NCBI GenBank assembly: GCA_002269645.1
Contig: NIVC01000273.1
Location: 225,165-289,164, forward strand
Length of the DNA: 64,000 nucleotides
Direction of reading: 5' to 3'
DNA from: Macrostomum lignano
Taxonomy: Eukaryota
In this document: one piece after another, positions 13,191 through 44,856 of the stretch
Position numbering within the stretch: the stretch's first letter is position 1
How the letters are laid out: the number at the start of each line of letters is the position of its first letter
Program-made: the position numbers and the translations under genes
The notes under the pieces: model-generated
Databases searched by the model: none
Told to the model about the DNA's origin: nothing
What the model saw: only the letters and a program-made list of their open reading frames with translations

Positions 13191-13193
13191 ATT

Positions 13194-16964: not shown

Positions 16965-16995
16965 GAGACGAATTTTTCGTAAAAAGGGGAGATAT
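16965..16995 (+). other. Gypsy-type integrase-tail remnant and polypurine tract
   Basis: ATTCGAGACGAATTTTTCGTAAAAAGGGGAGATAT directly before TG; reads IRDEFFVKRGDIV, resembling the (F/R)xDE..xGG C-terminus that overlaps the PPT in Ty3/Gypsy elements. Confidence 0.65.
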
Positions 16996-17440
16996 TGTAG
17001 AGATCTTCAAACACAGTAGCCTACTAAAAGTAGTAACATAAAGTTATGAATACAAATTTAAAAATAGCTATGTGTCATACTCTATTTTTAGTAATACCAG
17101 TCATATCACGCAAACAGCGAGTGGCTATGCTATTGTTCGAAAAAACCGGTTCTCGACATATATTTTTAGAACTTCCAAATATGGTAAATTTTAACCTGAA
17201 TGTGACCCAAGTCTCACCACTTTCTATTCAAAAACCCCACCTGTCAAATAATAAAATTCCTTTCGTGAACTCATCAAAAAACCGGTTTTGAGCTCAAGGT
17301 CGACTCAAGGCCGAAAAATTGTGTATAAATACAAACGCAAAATCCGAGCTGAAATCTCAGACTCGGAGCAGCCTCCAAAGATCTTGGGCTTTGCAAGAGC
17401 AGCCAACGAGGCTATATCTCTGAGGAAGAGATAAACACCA
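16996..17440 (+). mobile_element. LTR L1 (TG...CA, 445 bp), with PPT upstream and PBS-like site downstream
   Basis: TGTAGAGATC start; TATAAATA near 17324; TCAGAC initiator-like site about 30 nt later; CA followed by ATTGGTAAGC; homologous to L2, L3 and L4. Confidence 0.75.
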
Positions 17441-17442
17441 AT

Positions 17443-18017
17443 TGGTAAGCTTTGTTCAAGTCTTCGTTATTTTGATTATTGAGAGCGATTGTTATTGCCG
17501 GCCGATACTGTTCAGTTGATTTTATTGAGTCTATTGAGTTTGAGGCCTCCCTTTTCCTAAGGGACTGGATAGGATCTGCGGACCGATTCCGATACCCTTA
17601 GAGGGTTATCGATTGATTGATTTTGGTTATCATAGATTAACCGATAGGAGCACACGACTCCGATTCCGTTAGTTCTAGAAGAAGACGCCCTTTCTGGAAA
17701 ACCTCGTATAGAAGTTGATTTTGTTAGTAGGGCGCATCGTTGATATTGATTTCTGCACTCGAGGAATACATTGAATTCTGCACCCGAAGAAATACTGCGA
17801 CGTCGATTTAATTGTTACGCTCTCACTTTCGGCCGATTCTAGACTTCAAGAAGACTACCCAGGGAGGAACAGCTCTAAGGAGACGAGCTCTACAGACACG
17901 CGCGACAAAGAAGAGGAGCCCGCAACAGTAAGTGATCACTGATTTTGTTCCCAGGCTTAAGTGTCTGGAAGTGGGAGTTTTCGGGAGACTGATCACCTCC
18001 CGAATCAACTCTTCACT
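17443..18017 (+). other. Conserved non-coding leader after L1, ending in a hairpin with loop ACTGATCAC (17988-17996)
   Basis: Aligns with 18703-19283, 34613-37165 (split) and 39363-39896. Confidence 0.7.
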
Positions 18018-18054
18018 GTATTCCACCGAAGCCGCTAACCGTTTTGGAACGGTT

Positions 18055-18288
18055 ATGTACACCGGTGAGGAGTCTGTCGGGGTCTATACCTGGCAGAAAT
18101 ATCTAGGAGAGAGTATAGAAGAAGCAAGAAACGCCGATAGTAATGTGAACTATTTCCAAGTAGTATGTGCGCTAGCGAACATGTTACAGACGCAGCTATT
18201 AATTATGAAGGCGTCAACGGAGGACATTAGGCACAACCAGATGATGTACCTGGCGATTATCGAAGGAAAGCTGGGTTATCTGTGCCGG
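18055..18288 (+). pseudogene. First ORF after the L1 leader, cut off by the LTR L2 insertion
   Basis: ATG at 18055; the reading frame runs into the TG start of L2 at 18289. Confidence 0.4.
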
Positions 18289-18700
18289 TGTAGAGATTTC
18301 CAAATAAGATACAAAGTAGACTACTATAAGTAGCAACATGAAGATGCGAAAAACTCGAATGTTACAAAAACTGCAAATTGTCATACTCTATTTTTAAAGA
18401 CCACGAAAACAACAAGTGACCATCTTTTGCAACATTTAAATTTAGAACTCCGAATATGGTATCGGCGCTCAAAGCTAATGTATTCCATAGGGGTCAAATT
18501 TCCAAAGCGCGAAACTGTCACCTACTAAAAATAAGCTGTTTCTCAACAATTTTTCCTATAAATACAAGCCAAAATCCGAGCTAAAAATCTCAGACTCGGA
18601 GCAGCCTCAAAAGATCTTGGGACTCGGAGCAGCCTCTAAAGATCTTGGAGCTTGCTGGAACAGCTAAGCGAGGCTACATCTCTGAGAGAGAAGTAAACCA
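18289..18700 (+). mobile_element. LTR L2 (412 bp), 5'-type with no PPT upstream
   Basis: TGTAGAGATT start; CTACTATAAGTAG block; TATAAATA; TCAGAC; CA followed by ATTGGTGAGC. Confidence 0.75.
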
Positions 18701-18702
18701 AT

Positions 18703-19283
18703 TGGTGAGCCGTTGCTCGAGCTTTTGTTATTGATTTTGAGAGCGATTTATTGCCGGACGCTAATGTCCAGTCGATTTGACTGAGTTCATTGAATTTGAG
18801 GCCTCCCATTTTCCTAAGGGATTGGATAGGATCTGCGGACCGATTCCGATACCCTTAGAGGATTATCGATTGATTGATTTTGGTTATCCTAGATTAACCG
18901 ATAGGAGCACACGACTCCGATTCCATTATTTCTAGAAGAAGACGCCCTTCTTGGAGGACCTCGTTGTTGTTACAGAAAGTAGATTTTATTACAAGGGCGC
19001 ATCGTTGATATTGATTACTGAGCTCAAGGCCTATATTGATTTGCATTCGAGAAATACTGCGACGTCGCCTGATTTGATCGTCACGCTCTCATTCGGCCGA
19101 TTTAAGACTTCAAGAAGATTCCTCCGGAGAAGAAGAAGATTTGAAGAAACGAGCTCGGAGAACCTGCACTACACAGAAGAGGAGCCCGCAACAGTAAATG
19201 ATCACTTTATTTTGTTCCCAGGCTTAAGTGTCTGGAAGTGGGAGTTTTCGGGAGACTGATCACCTCCCGAATCAACTCTTCAC
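18703..19283 (+). other. Conserved leader after L2, hairpin loop at 19255-19263
   Basis: Near-identical to the L1 leader over most of its length. Confidence 0.7.
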
Positions 19284-19331
19284 CGGGTCCTACTTAGAAT
19301 TGATATACCAGAGGAATTTAAGGACCCAACA

Positions 19332-19871
19332 ATGTCTACATCTAGTGCTAATGATTATTCGTACGTAGAGGGTAAGGTTAGGTGGTCGATAACAATCGGC
19401 CAACTATCTTCGCAGAGCCGCATTCATCTGCAGACGGAGTTATTGGGATACGCCTCTACCATCATGACGCCGCTAAATATGGCCATACTATACGATTTTA
19501 TTGGTAACCTGCAGGCTCAAATGAAGTCAAAAGACCAGAAATCGGTAGAGTTAGATGTTAACACTCTACTAGCCATTAATGCCTCAGCGTTTAGTTATGT
19601 ATCACCAGCTGTAACACTACCGAAGCCAGACTATAATAAGCCGGCAGAACTCATCTTTTCGAAGAATGTCGATAGATCGAGTCTTTCTTATCAACTGGCC
19701 AAGACAATGATAGAATGTAATCAAGTAATAGCAAAAGCTATTACAAAGGCCAACGCGAATTTTACAAAATTACAGATGCAGCTTTCGCAGCCAGGAGTGT
19801 CCGAAACAGGATTAAGCGCCCACGCTCTAAACAATGAAAGAAGAGCTGTATTCCAAAACAGGGCCGACTAG
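19332..19871 (+). CDS. Hypothetical 179-aa protein in the gag position
   Basis: Intact ATG ORF (CAACAATG context) about 50 nt after the leader hairpin; no recognisable Gag motif. Confidence 0.55.
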   Translation: MSTSSANDYSYVEGKVRWSITIGQLSSQSRIHLQTELLGYASTIMTPLNMAILYDFIGNLQAQMKSKDQKSVELDVNTLLAINASAFSYVSPAVTLPKPDYNKPAELIFSKNVDRSSLSYQLAKTMIECNQVIAKAITKANANFTKLQMQLSQPGVSETGLSAHALNNERRAVFQNRAD

Positions 19872-19888
19872 ATTCATCGACAAAGAAT

Positions 19889-20911
19889 ATGACAGAATAC
19901 ATCCCCATAGACGGATTTACACGCAATCAGGCTATAATAATATTTGCCGTTGCTAAGTGTCGATTATGCAAAGACATTAGGTACCTGCCGAAAGAAGTGT
20001 ACGAAAAAATTTCTCGCAAATACAACGACAGCTACTGGATAGGTAACGGTGAGTTTGGGACATTTAAACTGTCACCGGAGCAATCGCAGTTGATTGATCC
20101 AGTCAAAAATCCAGATCTGCTGGAATATAGTTCAGATAGTCCTGTAGGTGGATACTCGGTCAACTTAAAGAAGTTGACGGCAACTGCTCTTTCCATTAAG
20201 CCATTGCCAAACAACACAACCGTGCCTGTAGTGACAGGTGAGGCAAGAAACGAGCTTTATAAATTGTATTTTCCATTTGAGAGACAGCCAAGAACCACTC
20301 GCCGCCGTGAGAGGTCGCTCAGTGCCAGACGGCTAGAGTATGACGATGGCACCTCTATGAGGTCAGAGTCGCCATTTCCACGTCCTCTATCACGAGGACA
20401 GTCTCCGTATCGCAGGCCTCAATCGCCGTTTCGGCCACATCAGATGCCGCATCAGATGCCGCATCAGATGCCACAGCCGCCGCCGTACCAACAGCATTCA
20501 CAGCCGACGCCGCCGCCACTGTTGCAGATGCCGCGACCACAGCCGGTATCGCAAATGCCACGACCACAGCCACCTCAGCTGCCGCCACCTCAACTGCCGC
20601 CGCCTCAACTGCCGCCGCCACAAGTAACTCAGCCGTCTCAGCCGCCACAAGTAACTCAGCCGTCTCAGCCGCCTCAGCCGCCACAAATAACTCAGCCGTC
20701 TCAGCCGTCTCAGCCGGCTCAGCCATCTCAGCCGCAAGTGCCGCCGCTCATGATGCCGCCGTTTAATAGGCCGCCGCCGCCACCGCCGCGACCACCTCAG
20801 ACAATGTCGCTGCCTACAACTACCCCATCTCAAGCAATGCCGTCGCTGGCTGCTTCAGAGTCAGAGCAACAATCAAACCCTCGACGGAGTCGAAGCAGGT
20901 CAAGGACGTGA
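19889..20911 (+). CDS. Hypothetical 340-aa protein with a globular N-terminus, Arg/Ser-Pro segment and Pro/Gln repeat tail
   Basis: Intact ORF; RSESPF, QSPYRRPQSPF, PHQM and SQPPQ repeats, terminal RRSRSRSRT. Confidence 0.55.
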   Translation: MTEYIPIDGFTRNQAIIIFAVAKCRLCKDIRYLPKEVYEKISRKYNDSYWIGNGEFGTFKLSPEQSQLIDPVKNPDLLEYSSDSPVGGYSVNLKKLTATALSIKPLPNNTTVPVVTGEARNELYKLYFPFERQPRTTRRRERSLSARRLEYDDGTSMRSESPFPRPLSRGQSPYRRPQSPFRPHQMPHQMPHQMPQPPPYQQHSQPTPPPLLQMPRPQPVSQMPRPQPPQLPPPQLPPPQLPPPQVTQPSQPPQVTQPSQPPQPPQITQPSQPSQPAQPSQPQVPPLMMPPFNRPPPPPPRPPQTMSLPTTTPSQAMPSLAASESEQQSNPRRSRSRSRT

Positions 20912-21331
20912 CTGCCACCTCCGCAAGCAACTCAGCCACCGCCGCCGCTCATGATGCCGCCGCCAATGTTGCAGCTGCCGTCTTCAAATGGTCGAGGACG
21001 AGGAAGAGGAAGTGGGGGGAATACTAACCCCCCAAATCTGCAACCATTCCCGCCGAAGTAATTAGGAATAGTCAGGAATAGTTAGGAATGGTAAAGACTG
21101 CAGTCTTCCTTCCATAATTTTAAATTGCTTTAAAATGTGTTTAAATATGCCAAAATTTTCTCTTTTCGGTTTAGGGTTCCTCTTTTTGGTTTAGGGTTCC
21201 TCTTTTTGCTTTAGGGTTCCTCTTTTTGGTTTAATAATATGCTTATTTTTCGCATATTTTCGGCATTTATTAAATAAAAAATATATTTTTTTAAGATAAG
21301 GTTCTCTTATACTAAATCTTCTATCGCCACA

Positions 21332-23734
21332 ATGAGTCTATCAGTCAGAGAAAAAATTGCCCATTACGTAGATGCTGTGTGTGTATCAGCGGATTACACC
21401 GCTAGTGCTTCTGCTCGTATATTAAAGTACTGTTAACACTTTCCTATCTCTGGTGTGCCACGAGACACTTTGCCGCTCAAATATTGCTTCTTCACATTTA
21501 TCACCGCACCTGACCCTGTAGTTGATAAGCATGTTTTGGAGTGCATCGAAAAACTTCTCTCGGCTTCCTACCAGAAAGACGAATACAGACCTGGTTGGGA
21601 CAGCTCTCAGTACCCAAGCCTGCAATCTACGCGCGTCTGCCTTATTGTGTTACTGGCCTATGGTGGTGTTCCGCGATCACTCTCACCGCCGATACCCATC
21701 TACCAAAATCCACGACTGCTGGATGGTCATAAGCACAAGTTTGACTGCGTCTCAGGCGGTCTAGTAGTCGACCTTAACGAGAAGTCGGAATTCTACCACC
21801 ACTACGCTTACTTGCTGACCGCTGATCGCGCCAATAAAAGGTATGACATAAAGATCGCCACAAAGCTGCTTTTGGAGGAGCTTGTTCTAAGCTCTCTGAA
21901 GGTGGGACTGTCATACTGTGAAGTCATGAAAACACTAGACTTCATGAGATCTGCTGACTTGATTCCGCTTAACTACAAACTCAGCCCAGCACCGCGAAGG
22001 ACAGATGGTAACTTTGCTGAGTACTCTGTGTTTCATATGGAGTTTCACTTATTTGCTAATACAGTTATTAATGGGCTCGACAATACCGATTTGCTGCATA
22101 GAATTGACACTTACTACTGTGAGTTTCTCAAGGTCACAAACAAGGTTGTTCGCAATGACATCCTCTCGCTAGTAAAAGGTGATGAGGCAGGGCGCTACGC
22201 ACATGCTGCTGCTGACTACATAGAGAAGCGTAGAGATCTGTTTGCCAAATTTGACGTCTGCGCAATCTCGGGCCGTAATAAATCGAAAGACTGCTCGCCT
22301 CCAACTGACTCATTCAAAGATCGGTCAACTGAGGTTGCTTTGACGGTTAAGGAGTATGTGAGTGCTAGTAAGCCTCTTATAGAGACTAAGATAAGGGAGA
22401 CGCCGATCGCACCCAGTACAGGTAGAGGGTCTGTGAATACAAGTGCGTATGCGGAGTGGCAGAATAAACGACCACTATCGCCACAGCCAGTATTGCTGAA
22501 CTTGGAGCCGCCAGAGCCGACACCAGAGCCGACACCAGAGCCGAAATTGAAACCAACTATTAAATTTTCAGAGAAAAATAGTTACCGTACTTTTACTAAT
22601 GATGAAGATATTTTTGTAAGTAAGGTCGAACGGGATGCTATGGATGAAGCCGCAAGAGTAGCTAATGAAGTTTGGATGGGATTTGATGATTGGAACGACG
22701 ACATTACCAGTGTATCAGCCGCTGCCGCCGCTGCCGCCGCTGCTGATACTGGTGCCGCTGCCACCGCTGCCGCCGCTGCCGCCGCTGCCGCCGCTGACGA
22801 GACAGATCAGGAGTTTCAGAAGTGGAAGGAGGCTAATCTTCAAAATTTTGAAGATTTCCGAGAGAAATTTACCACCGACACCTTTATAATCCCAGAGAAG
22901 CAAAAGGAGATGGCCGCCACTAAATCGAAATTAGAAGAAGAGATTAACAGCCTATACCAGCAAGTAGAGCAAATTAAAAGTTGGGAAGACTACTTAAGAA
23001 ATTTCCGTGAAGGTATTGATTACGCAACTAGGCTACTTAACGACATAGACAATGGCTACTATAATGATAACCGGCGCACTCTGTCCCATTTTGCCAACGT
23101 AGATGCGGCCGATCTCTTAGCAGAGGTAGACGCCGCCACAGTGAATGCCGCCAGAGTAGATGTAGAACCAGTAGGTGAACCAGCCGTAGAACCAGTAGGT
23201 GAACCAAACGAAGAACCAGACGAAGAAGATCCAGACGACGAAGATCCAGACGACGAAGATCCAGACGACGAAGATCCAGTTGCCGCAGATTCAGTTGCCG
23301 CAGATTCAGTTGCCGCAGATCCAGGTGCCACAACAACCCTGTTTGAGGAGCACTCACAGATTCCAAACAGTGGGGAATTTGGAGCCAGGATTGGAGCTGA
23401 AGTCGGAATCGGAGCCGGAATCGGAGTCGAGGATGAGATTAAAAAACTAGAAGGTAGAATAATTAATGATCTACAAAATCATTTAATTGATGATTTGGAG
23501 AAACGAGTAGCTGGTAAAGTAAATGATGAGATTACATTCATGTTTAAGAGATTAAATAGATTAATAGACACTCACTCGAAAACTCTACAATATTACGAAG
23601 AACAACTTAAGAATGCCGTAGATATGTATCAAGGTATGAATCCGGAAGAGCCGTTGGATAGTGTGTTCGGAGAGTCGCTAATAGGTCATCTGTTAGAGGA
23701 GGATTTGCCAGAGTCATCACAACTGCCGCCATGA
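21332..23734 (+). CDS. About 800-aa hypothetical protein (single in-frame TAA at 21434) with poly-Ala, coiled-coil and acidic repeats
   Basis: ATG at 21332 is in frame with ORF-track 21455..23734; long open frame. Confidence 0.55.
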
Positions 23735-25119: not shown

Positions 25120-26611
25120 GACGTGGCCCTCACTTTTGAATCTTTCAGCATTCGCTTAATCTTTTGAGTGATTCGCTCCTCAGAAGCTTGCGGAAACGCC
25201 TTGGTTACGGCCACTGAAAGCAAATAAATTCACTGCATTTTACACGTAGGCACGCGAGTACTTTTTGTGACATCGTTTTAACTGCATGGAAATACAATTA
25301 CAGGTAAATAGACAGAGGCGTCGCCATGGATTTTATGGTGGGGGGGACAAAGCCAAGAATTCTATATGCACATGTACACGACGAAATGCCTACATGTACA
25401 TTATTTTCAGAATCGGTGTTGTCAGCACTAATTTTAGCACTGCAGGCACTCATTTTAGCTCCGCAGGCACTCATTTTAGCGCCGCAGACACTTATTTTAG
25501 CGCCACAGGCACTCATTTTAGCACTGCAGACACTCATTTTAGCACTGCAGGCACTCATTTTAGCTCCGCAGGCACTCATTTTAGCGCCTTAGGCACTTAT
25601 TTTAGCGCCACAGGCACTCATTTTAGCACTGCAGACACTCATTTTAGCACTGCAGGCACTTATTTTAGCGCCACAGGCACTCATTTTAGCGCCTTAGGCA
25701 CTTATTTTAGCGCCACAGGCACTCATTTTAGCACTGCAAGCACTCATTTTAGCACTGCAGGCACTCATTTTAGCTCCGCAGGCACTCATTTTAGCGCCTT
25801 AGGCACTTATTTTAGCGCCACAGGCACTCATTTTAGCGCTGCAGGCACTCATTTTAGCACTGCAGGCACTCATTTTAGCTCCGCAGGCACTCATTTTAGC
25901 GCCTTAGGCACTTATTTTAGCGCCACAGGCACTCATTTTAGCACTGCAGACACTCATTTTAGCACTGCAGGCACTCATTTTAGCTCCGCAGGTACTCATT
26001 TTAGCGCCTTAGGCACTCATTTTAGCGCCTTAGGCACTTATTTTAGCGCCACAGGCACTCATTTTAGCACTGCAGACACTCATTTTAGCACTGCAGGCAC
26101 TCATTTTAGCTCCGCAGGTGCTATTTTGTCACCATGCAGCAAAAATTAATAACGGGCCACAAGGTGGGGGTGGGGGGACAAAGCATTGGCATGCCCCCCC
26201 CAGATATTTTACTGGAGGGGACACGTCCCCCCTGTCCCCCCCGTTGGTGACGCCCCTGTAAATATATTAGTAGTGCACATTAGTGGTACATTAAAGGGTA
26301 AATATAAATATACGAAGTACATTTGGAAATGATACGTATAAATTCCTAAGCAAAGGTTTGGCAGGAGCATTAGTTCATAACATTAACTTACAAATGACGA
26401 TCGGTTCCAAGGTTTTGGCAAATGATAGCTTATTGCCACTTGTTTTTCGTGCTTGCGAATAATCCCTACCAGACCGATTGAAAGCCTGTTGAAACTTTCT
26501 TGACAGCAGAAAGTCCATTATTCTTGCTGTGTGGGCTTCAGCATTGTTGCCACCAAGGCGTCGTAGCTTCGAAATCTGTAAAAGGACGCGCGTTTGAGTC
26601 ACCTGCAACAT
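25120..26611 (-). CDS. DUF4806/BEN-like accessory gene of the transposon, spliced, partial
   Basis: LRRLGGNN...RIMDFLL...AFNRSGR...KLSFAKT, with a downstream exon AFPQASEERITQKIKRMLKDSK. Confidence 0.5.
25313..26258. mobile_element. hAT-type MITE carrying a 21-bp tandem array (about 25430-26120)
   Basis: TIR CAG(A/G)GGCGTC(G/A)CCA; 8-bp TSD TAAATAGA/TAAATATA (7 of 8 match). Confidence 0.75.
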
Positions 26612-30401: not shown

Positions 30402-31270
30402 GTGAGCACCCTGCCGCAACTGAGTAGCTATTTTACCCCCCGCCAAAAAACAGAAATACATGCAATGGCCGCCTCTACTTCTATCCATAGTCAGATAATC
30501 GACACTATTAAGAGTATTAGCACCAAACACTCAAATAGTTCCGCCGTTGTAGTTAGTAAGTTGGGTGTTGATGAACAGTGCCAACTACTAAAAAGTCTAA
30601 AAGTAATAGAAAGCCAGTCCACGAAGAAAAATCGCACCAGAGAGAAAAGCAACAACGAAGAGGCAAAGTATCTAAGAGAACCTCGATTTATTGCTTGCTT
30701 GAAGGAAAAGCTTGACAATGTGAAAAACGAGGCAATTGTCGTCAAAACTCGGTAAGTTTTATTATAGAATCTTATCACTTAGTCAATAGCTTTTCAATGA
30801 GAAAAGAACATATTTTATTTCAGTTTCAATGAAGCGAAGGATTTATGCGCAGAGGAACTTAGTCAGGACGAAGACCAACTAAATCGATCGGTTTACTAAG
30901 CTGGAAAAATCTTCTTTGCCGATCTAGAAATTTTAGCCTGCCTTGCTGGAAGGAGGCAAGCGGAAGTTATTGCTAAGCTACGCGAATCCCTTGACTTGAG
31001 CATCAAAGGCGATGCTGCTAAACTGCAAATCGATGAAAAGTTCGCAGAAAGACTCTTCACAATCTAATTGTCAAATATCCAGTCCTGGTGGTTTCAGGCT
31101 ACAACTTTGAAACACTGCTAACCTACAAGGCTCTTATTCAGAAAACGGCGACAGAAGACGAGAATTTTGCTTGTCGCCTTAAAGTTTCACTAACATACGA
31201 TTCGAGGGAGAAAACGAGAACGACGACGAGATCGACGGCGAGAAGATGCTGCTTGACGAAACAACGGAAG
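30402..31270 (+). pseudogene. Two-exon 'SSAVVVS/HTH-like' gene, copy 2 (intron 30752-30823)
   Basis: Same KTR|GTAAG donor and the same 72-nt intron length as copy 1; exon 2 has several indels. Confidence 0.6.
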
Positions 31271-32631
31271 ACATGGCCAAGTCATCAATTTCTGGATAAA
31301 AAATGTCCAGAAAAATTTTTGGAGATCCACAAAAATGACTCAACATTAAAAAATGTTTTACTGCTTTTGTTACTACTCAAAGTAGTATACAAAACATCTT
31401 TTTGAAAAAATACACATTTACCTACACATTTACATACACATTTACACATTACCTACACATTCACATACACATTTACACTTTGGATTAAAAAATATTCTTT
31501 TGTAAATTCACGCATTCTTTTTCTCCTTTTTGATCTCTTGGCACAATAATTTTACCAAAAATCATAGTGAGTTTCAGGCCGTTTAGTTTCAATAGATGCA
31601 ATGGCAGCGAAGATGTTGCACTGCATTGCGCGTATATTTATACAAGTGAATACAGCGCGAGATTATTAAGGGGCCGAGGGAGGTGCGCACATGTGGCGTG
31701 GCTAAAGGATTTATGTAGCATTATTTCATCACCAACCTGCGGAGCTGCCACTTCATCATCTGTGGACTCCGCTATAGGCCCATTATCTGTGGGCTTTTGC
31801 TGCTGACGCCGAAGCCGCTCAGCTTGAACGTATTGTTCAAATTCTTCATCACTAATCTCTCTGAGTTGTTCCATTTTTTATAAAATAAATACAGCAATAA
31901 AATCTTCTTGCTTAATTTCTGTTTTGCATTGTGTCCGACCGAATTCGACATGAGGGGGGGGGCTATTATTCGTATGTAAATCTTTACCTAGTTTCTCATG
32001 TTCCAGTGCTATAAAATCTCTCCATGTATTCACCTATCGCCCCTAGGGTCGCGAGCATTGTTCAATTGTATCTTACCTGGCCCACTTCATATCTTTTTAC
32101 AACTAGAAAGAGGGTAAACACAAAAGACTTGCATGAGCCACTCCTATTGAATGCCAAAACCAAACACTTTTTGGCAGAAATTTTGGTTTTGGCAAAAATT
32201 TTGGCAGCCAATAGGAATGTTGAGTGCTGTGTTTATGTATAATTAGTTTTGTGAGTTCCTGCGAGAGCTTTTTTGACCATACGCTTCACTCAGTGTGGGT
32301 TCCACACGGCGTTAAAGCTAAGTCACAATATACAAATTAGTTTCAGGAGAAGTTCTCGTACTGAATGTCTAAAGCAGTTCCTAGAAATTGTGGTTTATTA
32401 ATGGCCATTTTATGACGAAAAATTAAGCAATATCAAATTTGATGACAGTTTCAAATTGTTTACACCTGAAATGGCATTGAGATGAACCAACGATTCCAAA
32501 ATAACTATTGATTTTAGAGCTAGAATTGTGCAAATGACACTTTTTCAAAATTATTGAAAAAACAAATCCCTAAAATCACTGTTTTAAGACCATTTTCACC
32601 TTTTTAAGTCATTTTTAGTGAATTTCAAGGT

Positions 32632-33024
32632 ATGCTTTGCGCTCAAACCTACCCATCCGATACCACTCCTGCCGATGATGAAGGCGGTGATGTGGTAGAG
32701 CGTCTGCAGTGCGCTCTGCTTCGTCTGAGAATGTCGCAGAAGAGTAGTCTGCTTCATGCGACCCAATGTGGAAAAATCTTGTTGACATTTAAAGCCAGTA
32801 ACCACAACTACGGTAGGAAGGCACGAAAACAGCATTTTGACTGTCTTTTTGATCGAGTAAACCTCAATGTTTCGTCAGCAAATTTTTATATGAAGTTATT
32901 CATGCTGGAAAGTGAATACCCTGGTCTTAAGCAAGTCTCCTTGCCGCTTCGTGATTTGAACACTAATATGTTAATATTAGTTGAAATCCTTGAGGATGAT
33001 CAGTCATGGAAGCAACTTGTCTGA
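32632..33024 (+). CDS. 'YP-L' family protein (130 aa)
   Basis: ATQCGKILLTFK...SSANFYMKLFMLESEYPGLKQVSLPLRDLNTNM aligns by eye with the 12308-12691 protein. Confidence 0.6.
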   Translation: MLCAQTYPSDTTPADDEGGDVVERLQCALLRLRMSQKSSLLHATQCGKILLTFKASNHNYGRKARKQHFDCLFDRVNLNVSSANFYMKLFMLESEYPGLKQVSLPLRDLNTNMLILVEILEDDQSWKQLV

Positions 33025-33306
33025 AAATAGACACTCTAGCCTGCTTTGGATTGGTCAGAAAAGGTTAACGCGTTGGCTTTTTCCCTATTGCAGAACACAC
33101 GAGAGAAATAGTTGTATATGGTATCGTAATAATTTTTGTAAAATAGTATACGGACGCTCTAGCTTGCTTTCGATTGGCCAGGGGACAAAGAAATGCCAGG
33201 GGACCATGCAAGATCTGACAGGTTTTATCGATTCTATCGATCAATTTATTGTTGAGGAGCATAAGGATGACGGGTAAAGAAGACATGGTTCGAGAACTCC
33301 CCGAAA

Positions 33307-33885
33307 ATGGAGGAGGTCTCCCAACAAAGACCCTCCTGCCAGTACGGCCACGGCATATGTTTTACGTGTTTTGACACGGGCCTAATACACCGGTGCCCCT
33401 TGTATCGAGATCCTCTTATCTATTGCATTTTCTGCGGCACGGACCCGCAAATCCGACTATGCAGCTCCAAACAATGGAGCTGCTTTACGTGTCTCCAACG
33501 GCTGGCCGGAAGGAAAATTACATACTGCCCAATGTGTATGGGTCCCTTTGAGGACACGGCAACTGACATCAGCCGCTTCACGCCTGAGCGATCCGGCTTG
33601 TGCTTCACAAACATTAACGAAATGACGGCGCAGGAGATCGCTGCCAACATTCACGATTGGCCGGTGCCCGCTAGTTACCAAGACACCCGGCGACGTCTAC
33701 TAAGCATGGGACGCTACCATGCTCAAAGTAACAGCCAAGTGACGACGGAAGCGATTTACCAACACCTTCTGGAGGCCACCGAACACACGGAATACACGGC
33801 CCTCCAGCCGCTCATCTGGCCAGTGGCGGTATTGGCATTTCGTGCCCGGCGCCTGATACACGGATTCCTAAGGGAACTTTTTTGA
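33307..33885 (+). CDS. Tandem double-RING-like protein (putative E3 ubiquitin ligase), first RING partial or degenerate
   Basis: CQYGHGICFTC...CPLY; CIFC...CSSKQWSCFTC...CPMC; conserved C-terminal IY..LL...LQ.L.WP.A.L domain. Confidence 0.7.
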   Translation: MEEVSQQRPSCQYGHGICFTCFDTGLIHRCPLYRDPLIYCIFCGTDPQIRLCSSKQWSCFTCLQRLAGRKITYCPMCMGPFEDTATDISRFTPERSGLCFTNINEMTAQEIAANIHDWPVPASYQDTRRRLLSMGRYHAQSNSQVTTEAIYQHLLEATEHTEYTALQPLIWPVAVLAFRARRLIHGFLRELF

Positions 33886-34134
33886 AACATAAAACAACCA
33901 AACACCACTCACTATAAGGCCTATTCTCCTAGCTAACTTCATTAATGTTACAAACGCATGTAAAGCCATTACTTGATTCGTTTATCTCATTACTTGCTGA
34001 TATTACTGTCAAATCATTCATTTATCTCATTACTTGCTTATATTACTGTAAAAGCATTCGTTTATAAATAAAATTACGCCTGCAACATTTTAAACAAAAT
34101 ACCACTCTTCTTTAATAATGTATTAAAAATTCGG

Positions 34135-34610
34135 GACGAAATTCTTGTAAAAAAGGGAGATATTGTAAAGATCTAAAAACTTAGTTGCCTACTAAAAGTA
34201 GTAAGATAAAACTATGAATAAAAATTTAAGAATAGCTATGCGTCATACTCTTTTTTTCTAATACCAGTAATATCGCGAAAATAGCGAGTGACTATGCTAT
34301 TGTCCGAAAAACCGGTTCTCGACATCTATTTTCAGAACTTCAAAATATGGTAAATGTTAACCTGAATGTAACATAATTCTCACTCTTTTCTATTCAAAAA
34401 ACCCCACCTATCAAATAATAAAAAAATTTTCGTGAACTCATCAAATAAACCGGTTTTGAGCTCAAGGTCAACTCAAGGCCGACAAATTGTGCATAAATAT
34501 AAACGCAAAATCCGAGCTGAAATCTCAGACTCGGAGCAGCCTCCAAAAAGCTTTGGCTCTGCAAGAGCAGCCAAACGAGGCTACATCTCTGAGGAAGAGA
34601 TTAAATATCA
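34135..34610 (+). mobile_element. Integrase-tail/PPT motif (34135-34163) plus LTR L3 (34164-34610)
   Basis: ATTCGGGACGAAATTCTTGTAAAAAAGGGAGATAT|TGTAAAG; roughly 85% identical to L1 by eye; CA followed by ATTGGTAAGC. Confidence 0.78.
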
Positions 34611-34904
34611 ATTGGTAAGCTTTGTTCGAGTCTTCGTTAGTAGTAATAGAAAATTACGTCCATACCCCATCTTTCAATTGCAAAACACGTAATAAGGTAC
34701 CCGTCAGAAATTTTATTACGCACATACCCTATTTTTCGATTAAAAATCAAGTAGTAAGGTACCGAACCAAACGGTAGGGTATTCTACAGGAATTGTAACT
34801 ACACTGCACCGCACCCACAAAGAATCCAAAAGAAGAAAAGATCTCAATTTCGATCAACCAACCAACCAACTTGTCCAAAAACGCACTTTCGGTATATTTC
34901 TGCA

Positions 34905-35290
34905 TTACAAAAACAGAGGCAACACATGTGCTGCAAAGCGTCGTAGACAAAAATACGCGCGCCGAAATTCATTCCTTCGACGAGACCCACAACCAAGAAT
35001 ACGCGTTAAAAAGAATCGAAGGCTACCACCACCAGTCAGTTTGAAATACAAATAAAACAACACCCAAATACCGCAATGACCAGTCCGAGGATCCTGAATA
35101 GCAAATCGGCTGTAGGACCAATTTTGAAAATCCCCACATTCTCGCCCCAACCACCGTCTAATATTTTCCGGTGGATTTAAGCCAAGCGAATCAAAATATT
35201 CCCCGACTCTTCGTCCACGGCGCCCCCTTACCCGTCTGCTACTCACCCAAACTGCAACCCAATGCCTACCAGGAAGATTCGAAGTGTCTG
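34905..35290 (-). pseudogene. Adenain-like protease, N-terminally truncated, inside the mini-Polinton
   Basis: NTDTSNLPGRHWV, YFDSLG, IQDPRTGHCG; an inverted fragment (GRRVGEYFHSLG) sits at about 36105-36155. Confidence 0.85.
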
Positions 35291-35642
35291 TATTCGCTTG
35301 GCTAGGAAAAAGCAAGCTGAAGTCTTGAATCTACTGAAAGAACATCTTGGCTTATCTACCGAAGACACTGCCAAGCGTCTCGACATTCCAACAAAGTTCG
35401 GGCAGCGCTTGTTCACATTTCATTCCCTAACAACAAAGTACCCGAACATCGTTTTTTCGGGTTACAGCTTCGAGACGCTACTAACATTCAAGAAGACAAT
35501 TGAAAAGGAAGCCGAAGATGATGAGAATTTCCGGTGCCAATTGGAGAATGCGCTTAACATCGTGTTCGAGCATGAGAAGGAAGAGAAGGACTTGCTAGAT
35601 GAGATCGATAAAATGGAAGTTTTATCGACAAATGAAGGCTAA
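35275..35642 (+). pseudogene. Exon-2 fragment of the 'SSAVVVS/HTH-like' family inside the mini-Polinton
   Basis: ARKKQAEV...LSTEDTAKRLDIPTKFGQRLFTF...KYPNIVFSGYSFETLLTFKK..E.DENFRC. Confidence 0.75.
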
Positions 35643-36528
35643 GAGTGACATTTTGAGCATTTTTTTAAATTAACAAATTCTGGAAAAAATTCTGGATTTC
35701 CAGAATCGGTTGGTTAGTTTGCATCTTTGGACAGCAGGCCGGGCTGCCACAGACGCAGGTGCTTGACACCGTGGCCAGGGCCGTGTGCGTGGCGACTGCT
35801 TATACGCCGCGGCGGCTGATGACGAACGCCCGGATTGATGAAATCAGGACGGTGTGCCGAGCGGAGGGAATTAATCTACTCGGACGACACGGGACGGGGA
35901 TACTCGCGACGGCGTCGGGACTACCATCCGACCGCCGCTGCACTTCTTTGGACGGTGCTGGCTACTGCCACCACTTGAGGTCCGACGGCTCCGTGTCCAT
36001 TGAGAGTGTGGCCAGATTCCGGGTGGACGAGACTGCGAATAGTTTTAAGATGGTATACATGCGCGCTCCGCCGCGGGTGCGTCGCCGAGATCCTTAAACT
36101 TAAGGGGGAGCGTGGACGAAGAGTCGGGGAATATTTTCATTCGCTTGGTTTAGAAATATACTGAAAATGCGTTTTTGGACTAGTTGGTCAGTTGATCGGA
36201 CTTGGGATCTTTTCTTCTTTTGAATTATTTGTGGGTACCGTGCAGTGTAGTTGGATTTCCTGTAGAATACCCGACGATTTGGTTCGGTACCTTTTTGAAC
36301 AAGTTGCTTGGTGGATCGAAATTGAGATCTTTTCTTCTTTTGATTTCTTTGTGGGTACGGTGAGGTGTAGTCAGACTTGCTGTTGTATACCCTACCATTT
36401 GGTTCGGTACCTTACTACTTGATTTTTAATAAAAAAGGGTATGTGCGTAATAAAATTTCAGACGGGTACCTTATTACGTATTTTGCTATTGAAAAAATGG
36501 GGTATGGACGTCATTTTCTATTACTACT

Positions 36529-37165
36529 TTCGTTATTTTGATTATTGAGAGCGATTGTTATTGCCGGCCGTTACTGTTCAGTTGATTTTATTGAGTTTGA
36601 GGCCTCCCTTTTCCCAAGGGATTGGATAGGATCTGCGGACCGATTCCGATACCCTTAGAGGATTATCGAGTTATTGATTTTGGATTATCCTAGATTAACA
36701 AAAAGGAGCACACTACTCCGATTCCGTTAGTTCTAGAAGAAGACGCCCTTTCTGGAGGACCTCGTATTGTTATAGAAGTTGATTTTGTTCTTAGGGCGCA
36801 TCGTTGATATTGATTTCTGCACTCGAGTAATACATTGAGTTCTGCACTCGAGGCATACATTGACTTCTGCACTCGAGGAATACATTGAGTTCTGCATTCG
36901 AGGAATACATTGAGTTCTGGATTTGAGGAATAAATTGAGTTCTGCATTCGAAGAAATACATTGAGTTCTGCACTCGAGGAATACTGCGACGTCGATTTTA
37001 TTGTTACGCTCTCACTTTCGGCTGATTTTAGACTTTAAGAAGACTACCCCGGGAGGAACAGCTCTACGGAGACGAGACACTCGCGATAAAGAAGAGGAGC
37101 CCGCGACAAGTGTCTGGAAGTGGGAGTTTTCGAGTGACTGATCACCACTCGATCAAACTCTTCAC
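36529..37165 (+). other. Remainder of the L3 leader, with an expanded ~24-bp tandem repeat (36810-36985) and hairpin loop at 37137-37145
   Basis: Colinear with the L1 and L2 leaders. Confidence 0.7.
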
Positions 37166-38279
37166 ATCTAGAATTTCGGCTCACGCGTTCTCTTTAAGCC
37201 TAGTATCTAACGAAAGCAAAATACAAAACCATCTCTTTGAACAGGTCACAACTTGTTCCACCGAAGGCAGGTCATTTTGTGTCTGAGAGTCTTTTGTGTT
37301 CCTGTCTTACTCATTTTTCTTACCCCTTGAAAGCAACACCAAAGGAAGAAGAGAATCACTGAAATAGGTGAAAAAATACTAAAAACAGGTGAAAGTTGTC
37401 TGAAAATAGCGATTTTTTGTGATTTTAAAATATTTTGAAAAAGTCCCATCTTCACGATTCAGCTCTAAAACCATGAGAAAAGTTGGATTGGCGGGTCATT
37501 TCAATGCCATTTTAGATACATACAATTTGAAATTGGTATCAAATTGCAGATTGCTTCCAGATCTAGACACGCATCACTCGCTCGCTCGTTCTCTCAGTAA
37601 AAACCCTATAATACACGCCAACCCCTACTACTACACATCACTCTCTTAACAATGACACACAACCTCCCTCTGTCTCTTTCTAATCCTAACTTAGCACGCG
37701 CACACTGTGGCACAATGAGACTAATCATGGACACGCTTAACCACGTTTTTTTGCTTAGTGTACTCACGAGGCCAGAATGCGAGGCTCAGCGGCTTTTTTC
37801 TTTCCGAGGCCAGGTAGCTTTTTTCTTTGCGAGGTCAAGTGGCCTTTATATGTGGCCTTTTTTGTCCATAAATACTCATGGCAGATGAAATTCCACACAG
37901 AGTAAAAAAAATCCGAATCTCTAGCTCCACCCAAAATGCCATCGCTTGCAACTCAAGAGAAAAGAATCGCTAAAGTACGCTCCAAGCAGAAAGACATACT
38001 TGCTCATCTCCAAAAGAAGCACAGGGCTAATGATTTGTGCAAGATCCAATTGAATACAATTCTCTAAGGTTGCAACTCTTCATCACTTCAACGCGATACG
38101 GATTTTCTAAATTCCGTAAATGTGAGTAATCTATCCGTTTTTGCATTGACTTAAGAATATCTAACCAAAATCCATTATTTTTTAGAAATTTCAAGAACTG
38201 ACTAAGTCCAATAAGTATCAAAAAGAAAAACTACAATCTTTGAAAAAGGCTAAGCGCGAAAAGGCGCCACCATCCCAAT

Positions 38280-38425
38280 TGGATTGCAACGTTTGCCTCA
38301 ATTAGATGAACGATTCAAGTCTGCTTCATTGAGGACATATCTTTCTGTCTGGATTGCCTTAAAAGGCTACATGGCGAAGGACAAATTATATGTCCAATCT
38401 GTCGCGTCGTGACGACAGTTGGCAA
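38280..38425 (+). pseudogene. C3HC4 RING-finger pseudogene
   Basis: CNVCLN*...H*GHIF-CLDCLKRL...IICPICR, with stops and a frameshift. Confidence 0.65.
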
Positions 38426-38649
38426 TGCTGATGCTCAGACAAAAAACTTTTGTGTTGAGTATTTTGGGACTGCCAAGTTTTCTAGACCCTTCGGCTCAGA
38501 GCACCGCCTCTGATGATCAGATGGATGAAGACTAGACGGACATGAAGAAGATTTAAGACAATAATGATCAAAAATGGTACTATCAAGCATATTGACTAAA
38601 GAAAAAGCTAACTACTAAAAATAACAATCGGGGTAAGTTCGCAAGTGCA

Positions 38650-38850
38650 CTATATTTAGAAGTTTGCAAACTCACTACAGCCGATTCGATAAGCCTGCAG
38701 CATACCAGGCCAGCTAACTTTGCGAGCTAGATTGCTGTCTATTAGAGCTGAAGAAAATAACATTAAGAGTATTTTCTGAACCAAATATGCTAGTTCATCA
38801 TTTGCTCTCTTAACTAAAAACCCAACTATGTTCGTCAATCATTATCGAGA
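38650..38850. repeat. About 200-bp block duplicated at about 43240-43450
   Basis: Both copies read MTNIVGFLV.RA.DELAY.VQK.LLM..SSALI.SNLA.KVSWPGMLQAYRIGCS on the minus strand. Confidence 0.7.
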
Positions 38851-38975
38851 AAATCAAGCACTGGCAGTGAAGTTGCCGCGCGGTGTTTTCCCACTGTTGA
38901 ATAACTTGCAAGTAAAATGTCGCCGGCGATTCTTTGACGAGCCGGAGTCGAAGGCTGCCGGAGAATTTATACTCG

Positions 38976-39360
38976 TGTAGGGAGTTATTAAACCATACAG
39001 TAATGCTCTACTTAAAGTAATATTCTAGGAAAGTCAATTTATTCTAGAATGAGTCATATCTATTTTAGGAATCACGCGCAAACAGAATGATTTAGAACGC
39101 TACATTGTTTGATCAAGGATCCGGATTCCAACAGCTGTATTTGCTTAACCCCATATATGGTAATGCTCAAACATGCATGACCGCTTAAACAAACATTTAC
39201 GACCTAAGTAAATACCCAATTTAAAACCGGTTTTTCTCCAAAAATTTTGCTATAAATATAAATGATAATTCGAGTCAAAAGTTCAGACTCAGAGCGGTCT
39301 TTACGAAGACTCCGAAGGAACAAAGAAGAAGAACAATCTCTGAGGGACCACACTTGTCCA
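38976..39360 (+). mobile_element. LTR L4 (385 bp, divergent), 5'-type
   Basis: TGTAGGGAG start; CTACTTAAAGTA block; TATAAATA; TCAGAC; CA followed by ATTGGTAAGC; leader runs to the hairpin at 39870-39878. Confidence 0.65.
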
Positions 39361-40080
39361 ATTGGTAAGCGTTTACCGGATTCAGTTCTTTGATTGTTAG
39401 CGTTAATAAGTGGATTTATTGAGTTATAAGATAGCAGTTCGTTGTCGATAAATTTGAGAAAGGCTTCCTTTGTTTCCTAGGAAATATTCCTAGAGGATTA
39501 TTGATATGAATTCAGTTATCCGTTACGTTTCGGACGTAACGAAGAAGACCTATTACAGAAACCTAGAGAATTTAACTGTTCAATTGTTCATTAGGGCGCA
39601 CGTGTTATTGTTAATTCCGAGCTCGAGGACCGTCAAGAATTCTGATTCTCGTTTTGGTCGACCCACAGATAGGAGTCAAGTACTCCAGAAGATCACAGTC
39701 GTTCACCGAAACCGGCCCCCACTACCGCTCAACCAAGCCAGACAGCACTAAACACCACAAGGCCCAGACGTCTGCAACTACGAGAGGATCCACTCCAGTA
39801 AGAGTTATTTGAATTTGCAAATACCTAGGCACTTGTTCCCCAGTGTCTAGAAGTGGGAGTTTTTGAGTGACTGATCACCACTCTTAAACTCTTCACTCGT
39901 TCGGTGTCCTTGTCATTCTTTTCAATATTGTTGGAATTTATGCTATATGCTATATGTTATATGCCGATAACGGAAATTGTGCAATCCCCGCGTTGATTGA
40001 GTTTCATATGAAGGGGAGATCTAGGTCATTGAGTTCTAGGTCAAGAGGAGACTTGGAACTGTTCGAACGATAGATTGCGA

Positions 40081-44714: not shown

Positions 44715-44856
44715 ACATTCACATAGCTCAATTGACTCTACCTTCCACTAAATATGGCCACATAGAAAACAGCATTGTTTCTGCGCACCAATCACAAACA
44801 ATAACCATCGAAACACCCGAGTCCACTACAATTAGTCTACGATAATATATATATAT

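What the first reader, a model, noticed from the sequence alone, without database searches (positions are those of the whole stretch)
16965..39900. Candidate new system: gag/pol-less LTR 'shells' loaded with non-retroviral cargo genes and chained through shared LTRs
Seen in sequence: four homologous TG...CA LTRs (16996, 18289, 34164, 38976), each with TATA, an initiator-like TCAGAC, then ATTGGTRAGC and a conserved ~550-nt leader. L1 and L3 are also preceded by a Gypsy integrase-tail/PPT motif, so each has a PPT on the left and a PBS-like site on the right. No RT, integrase or Gag motif is recognisable between them; the space holds RING, YP-L, HTH-like, KYWPD and long orphan ORFs. Established: TRIM/LARD-type non-autonomous elements keep only cis signals, and some LTR elements (bdelloid rotifer families, Ogre-like giants) carry extra ORFs. 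Inference: these are multi-gene retro-vectors mobilised in trans, or LTR/leader cassettes domesticated as promoters inside a larger DNA element.
Basis: partly seen in the sequence, partly recalled or inferred. Interest (0 to 1): 0.9.

Follow-up and report, generated by a model that had tools for sequence, protein, structure and literature searches.

The report
Solo and truncated flatworm retrotransposon LTRs
The four repeats are ordinary long terminal repeats of one retrotransposon family in a Macrostomum flatworm genome (two lone LTRs and two element 3' ends), not gene-carrying "shells"; the one unusual point is that these elements seem to carry RING-finger genes after the integrase.

Summary
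The four repeats exist at the stated starts, all on the + strand, each with a TATA box and TCAGAC. The repeat runs from TGTAG to CTCTTCA (0.92-1.02 kb), so the "550-nt leader" and the "PBS-like site" lie inside the LTR.

LTRs B and D each have their own 4-bp target-site duplication (CCGG, CTCG), so they are solo LTRs. No pair of LTRs shares a duplication, and no primer-binding site follows any copy. LTRs A and C keep about 40 bp of internal sequence (T-rich box plus polypurine tract) and have a RING-type ORF 0.25 kb upstream. A third RING ORF precedes an 80-nt LTR fragment (E).

No Gag, RT or integrase domain was found by Pfam between 7.4 and 46.8 kb.

On a public contig, a distant RING relative lies 119 nt after an integrase ORF and is followed by a second RING ORF. 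The RING ORFs are therefore probably accessory genes of a Ty3/Gypsy-like lineage.

The host is Macrostomum lignano or a close relative, a genome with about 1,900 known LTR-retrotransposon copies.

Verdict: a nested transposon graveyard. The "chained shells" system is not supported. The RING accessory gene is a modest new variant. One thing stays unexplained: LTRs A and C are 89-93% identical, while their colinear flanks are far more diverged.

The parts
16958..16995 (+). Last ~40 bp of a retroelement internal region kept upstream of LTR A: a T-rich box plus the polypurine tract AAAAAGGGGAGA, 3 nt before TG.
   Evidence: Read directly. 34/40 identical to the stretch before LTR C, whereas the other copies have unrelated left flanks.
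16996..18015 (+). LTR A, 1020 bp, TGTAGAG...CTCTTCA. A 3' LTR without its own target-site duplication.
17324..17450 (+). Promoter core and start of R in LTR A: TATAAATA (17324), TCAGACTCGGAGC (17357), and the donor-like palindrome CCAATTG|GTAAGC (17438-17450). The same three motifs occur in B, C and D.
   Evidence: Transcription and splicing are inferred, not shown.
17973..18013 (+). Conserved terminal hairpin of the LTR: inner stem 17982-17987/17997-18002, loop ACTGATCAC containing the palindrome TGATCA. Present in all five copies.
   Evidence: Consensus fold of the five copies shows two pairs with compensatory double changes. The last ~56 nt are 82-91% identical even between subfamilies.
18054..19871 (+). 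Orphan ORF starting 39 nt after LTR A, interrupted once by one insertion (LTR B). The open frames on the two sides are in phase.
   Evidence: ORFs 17932-18330 and 19260-19868. In-phase by chance has probability 1/3, so this is weak support.
18285..18288 (.). Left target-site duplication of LTR B (CCGG).
18289..19282 (+). LTR B, 994 bp, a solo LTR. U3 is more diverged than R-U5, and the start-site region carries a 28-bp tandem duplication.
19283..19286 (.). Right target-site duplication of LTR B (CCGG).
16185..16709 (+). RING-family ORF A (175 codons stop to stop). It lacks part of the zinc-ligand positions of the family and ends 249 nt before the tail of LTR A.
33271..33882 (+). RING-family ORF C (ATG at 33307). 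It lacks some zinc-ligand positions and ends 244 nt before the tail of LTR C.
34126..34163 (+). T-rich box plus polypurine tract upstream of LTR C.
34164..37164 (+). LTR C, a 3' LTR interrupted once by one transposon insertion. It carries 7 copies of a 25-bp repeat, against 2 in A.
34640..36527 (.). Neighbouring element nested in LTR C: a 1888-bp transposon with ~240-bp terminal inverted repeats (outer 31 nt differ at one base) and an 8-bp target duplication matching 7/8 (CTTCGTTA / TTTCGTTA). It carries a fam3 ORF and an ORF with a weak Ulp1-protease match.
38972..38975 (.). Left target-site duplication of LTR D (CTCG).
38976..39895 (+). LTR D, 920 bp, a solo LTR of a second subfamily (~72-74% identical to A, B and C).
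39896..39899 (.). Right target-site duplication of LTR D (CTCG).
44460..44711 (+). Fragment of a RING-family ORF (C-terminal domain only), directly upstream of RING ORF E. This gives a tandem RING-RING arrangement.
   Evidence: Profile search, E = 3.5e-9.
44836..45534 (+). RING-family ORF E (ATG at 44857), the only one with the full set of Cys/His ligands. It lies 1.2 kb upstream of LTR fragment E, with a transposon terminal-repeat fragment (45818-45855) in between.
46758..46837 (+). LTR fragment E: only the last ~80 nt of an LTR, 90% identical to the end of D.

Best explanation
The repeats are long terminal repeats of one LTR-retrotransposon family. The family is probably Ty3/Mdg4 (Gypsy)-like, has two subfamilies (A/B/C and D/E), and sits in a Macrostomum lignano-type genome.

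The whole unit from TGTAG to CTCTTCA is the LTR:
- U3 of ~300-360 bp, ending in a TATA box;
- a start site at TCAGAC;
- an unusually long R-U5 of ~610-690 bp, ending in a conserved hairpin and the CA end that integrase recognises.

How the present state arose:
- Elements integrated with 4-bp target duplications.
- At two sites, recombination between the two LTRs left solo LTRs (B, inside an ORF; D).
- At two colinear, anciently duplicated sites only an element's 3' end remains: RING ORF, T-rich box, polypurine tract, 3' LTR (A and C).
- A third 3' end is reduced to RING-RING plus an 80-nt LTR stub (E).
- A transposon with terminal inverted repeats later landed in LTR C.

The RING ORFs are accessory genes that this kind of element carries between integrase and polypurine tract. 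They may be expressed from a spliced subgenomic RNA using the conserved donor-like site in R.

The DNA between the LTRs is flanking sequence, other repeats and orphan ORFs, not cargo of retro-vectors.

Shown: repeat boundaries, target duplications, polypurine tracts, absence of gag/pol, RING paralogy, and integrase-RING adjacency on one outside contig.
Inferred: the U3/R/U5 assignment, solo-LTR origin by recombination, splicing, RING function, and superfamily.
For: - Boundaries: all copies begin with TGTAGRG/TGTAAAG and end with AACTCTTCA, with a 6/7 terminal inverted repeat.
- Target duplications: B has CCGG|CCGG and D has CTCG|CTCG exactly at those edges. The empirical chance of a 4-nt match is 0.0048, so two of four copies by chance is about 1e-4.
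- Polypurine tract with a T-rich box lies 3 nt before TG in A and C.
- The last 56-70 nt are the most conserved part between subfamilies (82-91%). They form a hairpin with two compensatory pairs.
- Host: the non-LTR RNase H ORF at 6209-7225 matches M. lignano proteins at 83-100% over partial alignments (10-45% of the query).
- M. lignano holds 1,928 LTR-retrotransposon copies in 409 families; 137 passed filtering, and 129 of those are Ty3/Mdg4. Solo LTRs are reported there (PMC12801592).
- RING link, outside the window: contig L001 has an ORF with Integrase_H2C2 (4.6e-21) and rve (7.6e-16). It matches PFV integrase and Ty3 Gag-Pol 7q5b. After its stop come 119 nt, then a RING-family ORF, then TAGATG opening a second RING ORF.
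- RING link, in the window: 3 of 3 RING ORFs lie 0.25-1.2 kb upstream of a same-strand LTR.
- The best relative of the RING profile is an M. lignano protein, E = 2.5e-94.
Against: - No full-length element, 5' LTR, primer-binding site or gag-pol of this family is in the window, so the family's coding capacity is not seen directly.
- The integrase-RING link rests on one 2-kb contig from an unidentified sample. Its RING ORF is only 25-36% identical to the window's.
- A and C share the same truncation point, which implies common descent by DNA duplication. Yet the LTRs are 89-93% identical while the colinear flanks are only 29-58% identical in protein (60% only to the third fam3 copy, in the LTR C insert), or 73-77% in DNA at best. 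This needs an extra assumption: gene conversion of LTRs, constraint, or recombination.
- All five LTR copies and 26 of 34 ORFs of 100 aa or more in 7.4-49.5 kb (24 of 27 in 7.8-37 kb) point the same way. A random transposon graveyard does not predict this.
- No canonical AATAAA is conserved downstream of the proposed start site.
Confidence: 0.7

Rival explanations
1. Pol-less RING elements. X1 (about 12.7-18.0 kb), X2 (about 28.9-37.2 kb) and the RING_E locus are non-autonomous derivatives of the family. They keep only the RING gene(s) and the cis signals (polypurine tract, LTR), perhaps with added ORFs (fam2, fam3), and are copied in trans by an autonomous partner. Selection for recognition by the same machinery keeps the ends near-identical while the interiors drift.
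For: - The X1/X2 order fam2-fam3-rep3-RING-tail-LTR is colinear. The ends are ~90% identical (LTR 89-93%, rep2 93%) but the ORFs only 29-58%. This is the pattern seen in autonomous/non-autonomous pairs.
- 3 of 3 RING loci lack any integrase remnant.
- ORFs and LTRs are co-oriented.
Against: - There is no 5' LTR or primer-binding site upstream of X1, X2 or the RING_E locus.
- rep2 also occurs inverted and elsewhere, so it is an independent repeat.
- fam3 also sits inside the transposon with terminal inverted repeats.
- X1 and X2 break off at the same nucleotide, which fits DNA duplication better than two retrotranspositions.
- The upstream region of the RING_E locus is unrelated to X1/X2.
Confidence: 0.15
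2. LTR plus leader units bound gag/pol-less shells that are loaded with several unrelated genes and chained through shared LTRs (A-B, B-C, C-D), moving as multi-gene retro-vectors.
For: - Four co-oriented LTRs with no gag/pol between them.
- A and C each have a polypurine tract on the left.
- A and C are the most similar pair.
Against: - B and D have their own 4-bp target duplications. No pair shares one.
- The supposed PBS is inside the LTR and is conserved only as GTRAGC.
- Right flanks are unrelated and lack a TGG-type primer-binding site.
- B and D have no polypurine tract.
- B interrupts an ORF rather than bounding a unit.
Confidence: 0.1
3. Promoter cassette. The unit is a promoter plus non-coding first exon plus intron (CAATTG|GTAAGC ... 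YYCCCAG|) shared by a multigene family, or LTRs co-opted as promoters for the ORFs that start 39-49 nt downstream of A and B.
For: - TATA box, initiator, a GTRAGC donor and a pyrimidine-rich AG acceptor are conserved in A, B and D.
- ATG codons lie shortly after A and B.
Against: - TG...CA ends, target duplications and polypurine tracts show insertion by an integrase.
- C lacks the acceptor.
- C and D have no ORF close downstream.
- The downstream ORFs are unrelated to one another.
Confidence: 0.05

Closest known systems
Solo LTRs and truncated copies of Ty3/Mdg4 (Gypsy) LTR retrotransposons of Macrostomum lignano (Mag, CsRN1, Gmr1/Osvaldo clades; PMC12801592)
   Same: Same host or a very close relative. 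TG...CA ends, 4-bp target duplications, a polypurine tract before the 3' LTR, a TATA-driven promoter in the LTR, and solo LTRs near genes.
   Different: The family cannot be assigned to a named clade because no RT is present. The LTR has a long R-U5 (~0.65 kb). No canonical three-unit heat-shock element is conserved; a single one occurs in B only.
LTR retrotransposons with extra ORFs after pol: errantivirus env (PMC13524379), Cer1 CERV (PMC10309623), bdelloid rotifer captured ORFs (PMC5408684), plant Retand (PMC11963269), orchid ALKBH domain (PMC9289625). All are known to me only from the titles and abstracts listed.
   Same: One or two additional ORFs sit between integrase and polypurine tract / 3' LTR. 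A splice-donor-like site near the start of the transcript could serve a subgenomic RNA.
   Different: Here the extra ORF is a RING-type zinc-finger protein with a second zinc module and a helical tail. It has no envelope features. A search for LTR-retrotransposon papers that mention a RING finger with an additional ORF found none.
TRIM / LARD non-autonomous LTR elements
   Same: LTRs and a polypurine tract with no gag/pol nearby.
   Different: Those are defined by two LTRs around an interior, with a primer-binding site, a polypurine tract and one flanking target duplication. None of the pairs here meets that definition.
Retroviruses whose major splice donor lies in R of the LTR (HTLV-1, foamy viruses; from my own knowledge, not tested here)
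   Same: A conserved donor-like GTRAGC ~80 nt after the start site, inside the LTR.
   Different: Use of the site is not shown. The element is a flatworm retrotransposon remnant, not a retrovirus.

Membership tests
LTR of an LTR retrotransposon | 5'-TG...CA-3' ends with a short terminal inverted repeat, coinciding with the homology boundaries | tested here: met
   TGTAGAG...CTCTTCA (6/7 inverted) in A, B and D; TGTAAAG...CTCTTCA in C. Flanks beyond these ends are unrelated, except the left flanks of A and C.
LTR of an LTR retrotransposon | 4-6-bp target-site duplication | tested here: met
   B has CCGG/CCGG and D has CTCG/CTCG. A and C have none, as expected for 3' LTRs that lost their 5' partner.
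LTR of an LTR retrotransposon | Polypurine tract directly upstream of the 3' LTR | tested here: met
   AAAAAGGGGAGA (A) and AAAAAAGGGAGA (C), 3 nt before TG and preceded by a T-rich box.
LTR of an LTR retrotransposon | Primer-binding site directly downstream of a 5' LTR | tested here: not met
   No TGG-type site and no shared sequence within 20-40 nt after any copy. No copy behaves as a 5' LTR.
Complete (autonomous) LTR retrotransposon | gag and pol (PR, RT, RNase H, IN) between two LTRs | tested here: not met
   No such Pfam domain in ORFs of 50 aa or more across 7.4-46.8 kb. tblastn with the L001 integrase was negative.
Solo LTR | A single LTR flanked by its own target duplication, with no internal sequence attached | tested here: met
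   B and D. The frames on the two sides of B are in phase.
TRIM/LARD or 'retro-vector' (non-autonomous LTR element) | Two LTRs enclosing an interior with primer-binding site and polypurine tract, the pair flanked by one target duplication | tested here: not met
   All six LTR pairs lack a shared 4-nt duplication. No primer-binding site follows A, B or C. No polypurine tract precedes B or D.
Ty3/Mdg4 (Gypsy) superfamily | RT/IN phylogeny and PR-RT-RH-IN domain order | not testable with these tools
   No pol in the window. There are only indirect links: a RING relative lies next to an Integrase_H2C2 + rve ORF that matches Ty3 and PFV integrases, and Ty3/Mdg4 dominates in M. lignano.
RING-type E3 ligase domain | C3HC4-type ligand pattern and the cross-brace RING fold | tested here: inconclusive
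   - The ligand pattern is complete in RING_E and the outside relatives, and incomplete in RING_A and RING_C.
- Pfam RING models score below their cut-offs (Sina_RING 4.9e-4; zf-C3HC4_3 5e-6 for P0124).
- The AF2 model (pLDDT 82.9) superposes on the IDOL, XIAP, TRAF6 and cIAP2 RING domains at 1.8-2.5 A over 44-47 residues with probability above 0.9, but Foldseek E is above 0.03.
- Ligase activity was not tested.
hAT-like DNA transposon (insert in LTR C) | Terminal inverted repeats, 8-bp target duplication, hAT transposase | tested here: inconclusive
   Inverted repeats are present, and the 8-bp duplication matches 7/8. No transposase domain was found, only a weak Ulp1-protease match, E = 0.0095.

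The most novel reading that the evidence does not exclude
A lineage of Ty3/Gypsy-like retrotransposons in Macrostomum flatworms carries one or two fast-evolving RING-type (E3-ligase-like) genes in the position where errantiviruses carry env. That lineage has spawned gag/pol-less derivatives (X1, X2, the RING_E locus) that keep only the RING gene(s), polypurine tract and LTR, and that share near-identical LTRs with an autonomous partner.
Probability: 0.2. Interest if true: 0.6.

Novelty: new variant of a known kind. Interest (0 to 1): 0.33.

Why it matters
As submitted, the finding is mostly ordinary. Solo and truncated LTRs in a repeat-rich flatworm genome explain the "chained shells", and it should not be carried forward as a new system.

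What may matter is the side result. RING-type ORFs appear to be retrotransposon accessory genes. They lie between integrase and polypurine tract, are often in tandem, are very divergent, and have relatives only in M. lignano and on a few short contigs from unidentified samples. Viruses often use RING E3 ligases against host defences. A retrotransposon lineage that encodes one would be a new kind of accessory function for LTR elements, and a handle on transposon-host conflict in a regeneration model organism.

There is also a practical lesson for annotation: M. lignano gene models such as A0A1I8G201 may be transposon genes.

Tried and rejected
- Rfam and tRNA scans of the window found nothing.
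- The conserved LTR-end motif was searched in IMG/VR: no match.
- Word-index homology searches with the 765-aa ORF and the RING alignment found nothing.
- Exact look-ups of RING_C and RING_E found nothing on record.
- PDB sequence searches of the RING profile, the 765-aa ORF and the 203-aa ORF gave only weak zinc-ribbon/RING or coiled-coil noise.
- I considered that the "leader" is a 5'-UTR intron of a gene family. Rejected because of the target duplications, TG/CA ends and polypurine tracts, and because C lacks the acceptor.
- I considered Ginger-type DNA transposons (TGTNR ends, 4-bp duplication; from my own knowledge). Rejected because the terminal inverted repeat is only 7 nt and a polypurine tract adjoins two copies.
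- I considered A...C as one 20-kb element. There is no shared duplication, no primer-binding site after A, and a polypurine tract lies to the left of A.
- I considered Terminon-like telomeric giant elements. No telomeric repeats are present and no Penelope-type RT was found.
- R-U5 as a whole is not unusually structured (z = -0.07). Only the terminal hairpin is supported.
- Heat-shock elements: only one three-unit match, in B.
- A fourth RING-like ORF (38310-38510) is too weak to count.
- The sample behind SRR316283xx-4xx could not be identified. Supplements of PMC12801592 are not held.
- The alignment tools print a consensus line by default. I did not use or keep these.
- The profile used for one search was deleted afterwards.

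Full report
**What is there**

A self-comparison of the window, a multiple alignment and a profile search show one ~1-kb repeat family, always on the + strand.
- Four full copies: A 16996-18015; B 18289-19282; C 34164-37164, split by an insertion; D 38976-39895.
- One 80-nt terminal fragment: E 46758-46837.

Each full copy has a TATA box about 30 nt before TCAGACTC(R)GAGC, and CCAATTGGTRAGC about 80 nt further on.

**Where the LTR ends**

The data do not fit this.
- Homology continues for ~570 nt beyond that point in all four copies, at equal or higher identity. For A against C it is 93% there and 89% in U3.
- It stops sharply at the same sequence...AACTCTTCA, in all five copies.
- Beyond GTRAGC the "PBS" is not conserved between subfamilies.
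- The unit therefore runs TGTAGAG...CTCTTCA, with a 6/7 terminal inverted repeat.

The last 56-70 nt are the best-conserved part between subfamilies (82-91%). They fold into a hairpin whose loop holds the palindrome TGATCA and whose inner stem shows two compensatory double changes among the five copies. R-U5 as a whole is not unusually stable.

**Target-site duplications**

At the TG and CA edges, B is flanked by CCGG|CCGG and D by CTCG|CTCG. The empirical chance of a 4-nt match at this spacing in this window is 0.0048, so two of four copies by chance is about 1e-4.

None of the six possible LTR pairs shares a 4-nt duplication. The right flanks of all copies are unrelated (6-13/40 identical), and none starts with a TGG-type primer-binding site.

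B and D are therefore solo LTRs, each a separate insertion. B lies inside an ORF whose open frames on the two sides are in phase. I worked this out arithmetically and did not join the halves.

**A and C**

A and C differ from B and D. Their left flanks are 34/40 identical and consist of a T-rich box and a polypurine tract 3 nt before TG. They are 3' LTRs still attached to the last ~40 bp of an internal region.

Further upstream, nucleotide homology stops. However, the two neighbourhoods are colinear at protein level: fam2, fam3, a short repeat (rep3), a RING-like ORF, then tail and LTR.

LTR C carries a nested 1888-bp element. That element has ~240-bp terminal inverted repeats and an 8-bp duplication matching 7/8.

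**No gag/pol**

I scanned individual ORFs, plus all stop-to-stop ORFs of 50 aa or more between 7.4 and 46.8 kb, concatenated with X spacers. No RT, RNase H, protease, integrase or Gag family came up. For 20.9-28.2 kb only the three largest ORFs were scanned, individually.

**Host**

A non-LTR RNase H ORF at 6209-7225 (- strand) matches many Macrostomum lignano UniRef proteins at 83-100% identity. M. lignano is known to hold 1,928 LTR-retrotransposon copies in 409 families; 137 passed filtering, and 129 of those are Ty3/Mdg4. Solo LTRs are mentioned (PMC12801592).

**The RING ORFs**

The three paralogues (16185-16709, 33271-33882, 44836-45534; 29-43% identical to one another) each lie upstream of a same-strand LTR: A, C and fragment E. 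The distance is 0.25-1.2 kb.

Word-index searches found no relatives. An exhaustive profile search found five:
- an M. lignano protein with 2.5 tandem units (A0A1I8G201, E = 2.5e-94);
- four proteins on short Logan contigs.

Contig L001 is informative.
- It has an ORF with Integrase_H2C2 and rve domains. This ORF matches PFV integrase and the Ty3 Gag-Pol chain 7q5b.
- After its stop come 119 nt, then a RING-family ORF, whose stop abuts the ATG of a second RING ORF.
- 119 nt is too short to hold a polypurine tract and an LTR. The RING ORFs therefore lie inside the element, between integrase and its 3' end.
- The window shows the complementary junction (RING, polypurine tract, LTR) and also a tandem RING fragment plus RING ORF at 44460-45534.

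An AF2 model of RING_E, built from an 8-sequence alignment, has pLDDT 82.9. Its N-terminal module superposes on the IDOL, XIAP, TRAF6 and cIAP2 RING domains at ~2 A over 44-47 residues. The Foldseek E-values are weak, and the rest of the protein has no match. RING_A and RING_C lack some ligand positions of the family.

**Reading**

This is a nested transposon landscape:
- two solo LTRs;
- two colinear copies of an element 3' end without its gag-pol;
- a third, more eroded 3' end;
- a DNA transposon nested in one LTR;
- further repeat families (rep2, rep3), minisatellites and orphan ORFs.

The "shells chained through shared LTRs" are not supported. The promoter-domestication option has no positive evidence.

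**What remains unexplained**

- A and C break off at the same nucleotide, so they should descend from one truncated copy by DNA duplication. Yet the LTRs are 89-93% identical, while the colinear ORFs are 29-58% identical in protein and the best intervening DNA is 73-77% identical. Candidate explanations are LTR homogenisation by gene conversion, constraint on cis signals in non-autonomous derivatives, or recombination. I could not decide among them.
- All LTRs and most ORFs between 7.8 and 37 kb point the same way.
- No gag-pol partner, 5' LTR or primer-binding site is available, and the integrase-RING link rests on one contig from an unidentified sample.

**Limits observed**

The profile used for one search was deleted.

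Noticed in passing
window 30-5506: A string of + strand ORFs. One has a P-loop NTPase-like region and a weak TBP-like match (30-1040). One has a weak C2H2 match (1660-2790). A type-B DNA polymerase (DNA_pol_B_2) with an Endonuclease VII motif is split into four ORF pieces, i.e. at least three breaks (3123-5506). This looks like a decayed Polinton/Maverick-like or similar element.
   Followed up: no
window 6209-7225 (-): RNase H ORF of a non-LTR retrotransposon, 83-100% identical over partial alignments to many Macrostomum lignano UniRef entries with mixed names. This identifies the host and suggests that many M. lignano gene models are transposon chimeras.
   Followed up: partly
window 34640-36527; fragments at 45818-45855 and about 7025-7779: A transposon family with terminal inverted repeats (ends GTAGTAATAG...) and an 8-bp target duplication. 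It carries a fam3 ORF (paralogues at 14489-14905 and 30900-31402) and an ORF with a weak Ulp1-protease match (34908-35330, paralogue at 7025-7495). No transposase was found.
   Followed up: partly
window 8349-8905, 11006-11480 (inverted), 12697-13193, 28802-29929: The rep2 interspersed repeat, with ~80-bp internal sub-repeats. Copies are 83-94% identical. Its nature is unknown.
   Followed up: partly
window 12.7-18.0 kb versus 28.9-37.2 kb: Colinear duplicated segments with mosaic divergence. The repeats at the ends are ~90% identical (rep2 93%, LTR 89-93%), while the ORFs between them are only 29-58% identical in protein. This is unexplained.
   Followed up: partly
window 7.8-37 kb: Strong strand bias of ORFs: 26 on + against 8 on - for non-overlapping ORFs of 100 aa or more in 7.4-49.5 kb. 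Nearly all those on the - strand lie in repeats or beyond 40 kb. All five LTR copies are on +.
   Followed up: no
window 19889-23734: Two long orphan ORFs, 340 and 759 aa. Both have proline-rich, alanine-rich and acidic low-complexity tracts encoded by short tandem repeats. Neither has a detectable relative or domain.
   Followed up: partly
window 43581-43754: A short ORF with an OTU-protease-like catalytic motif (...PSDGNCFY...). The Pfam match to Peptidase_C65 is weak, E = 0.0013 and below the cut-off.
   Followed up: no
window 49800-64000 and 25286-26149: Dense arrays of 17-39-bp minisatellites in G+C-richer DNA (50-57%). Many form long spurious ORFs. One is a 21-bp array of 33 copies at 25425-26118. 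No telomeric repeats are present.
   Followed up: no
LTR copies: 17745-17790, 36809-36984, 18583-18648: Copy-number variation inside the LTR. A 25-bp unit with a CTCGAG core occurs twice in A and seven times in C. B has a 28-bp duplication spanning the proposed start site. C lacks 32 nt near the LTR end that A and B have.
   Followed up: partly
window 38642-38862 and 43233-43454: Another 220-bp dispersed repeat, 91% identical, of unknown nature.
   Followed up: no
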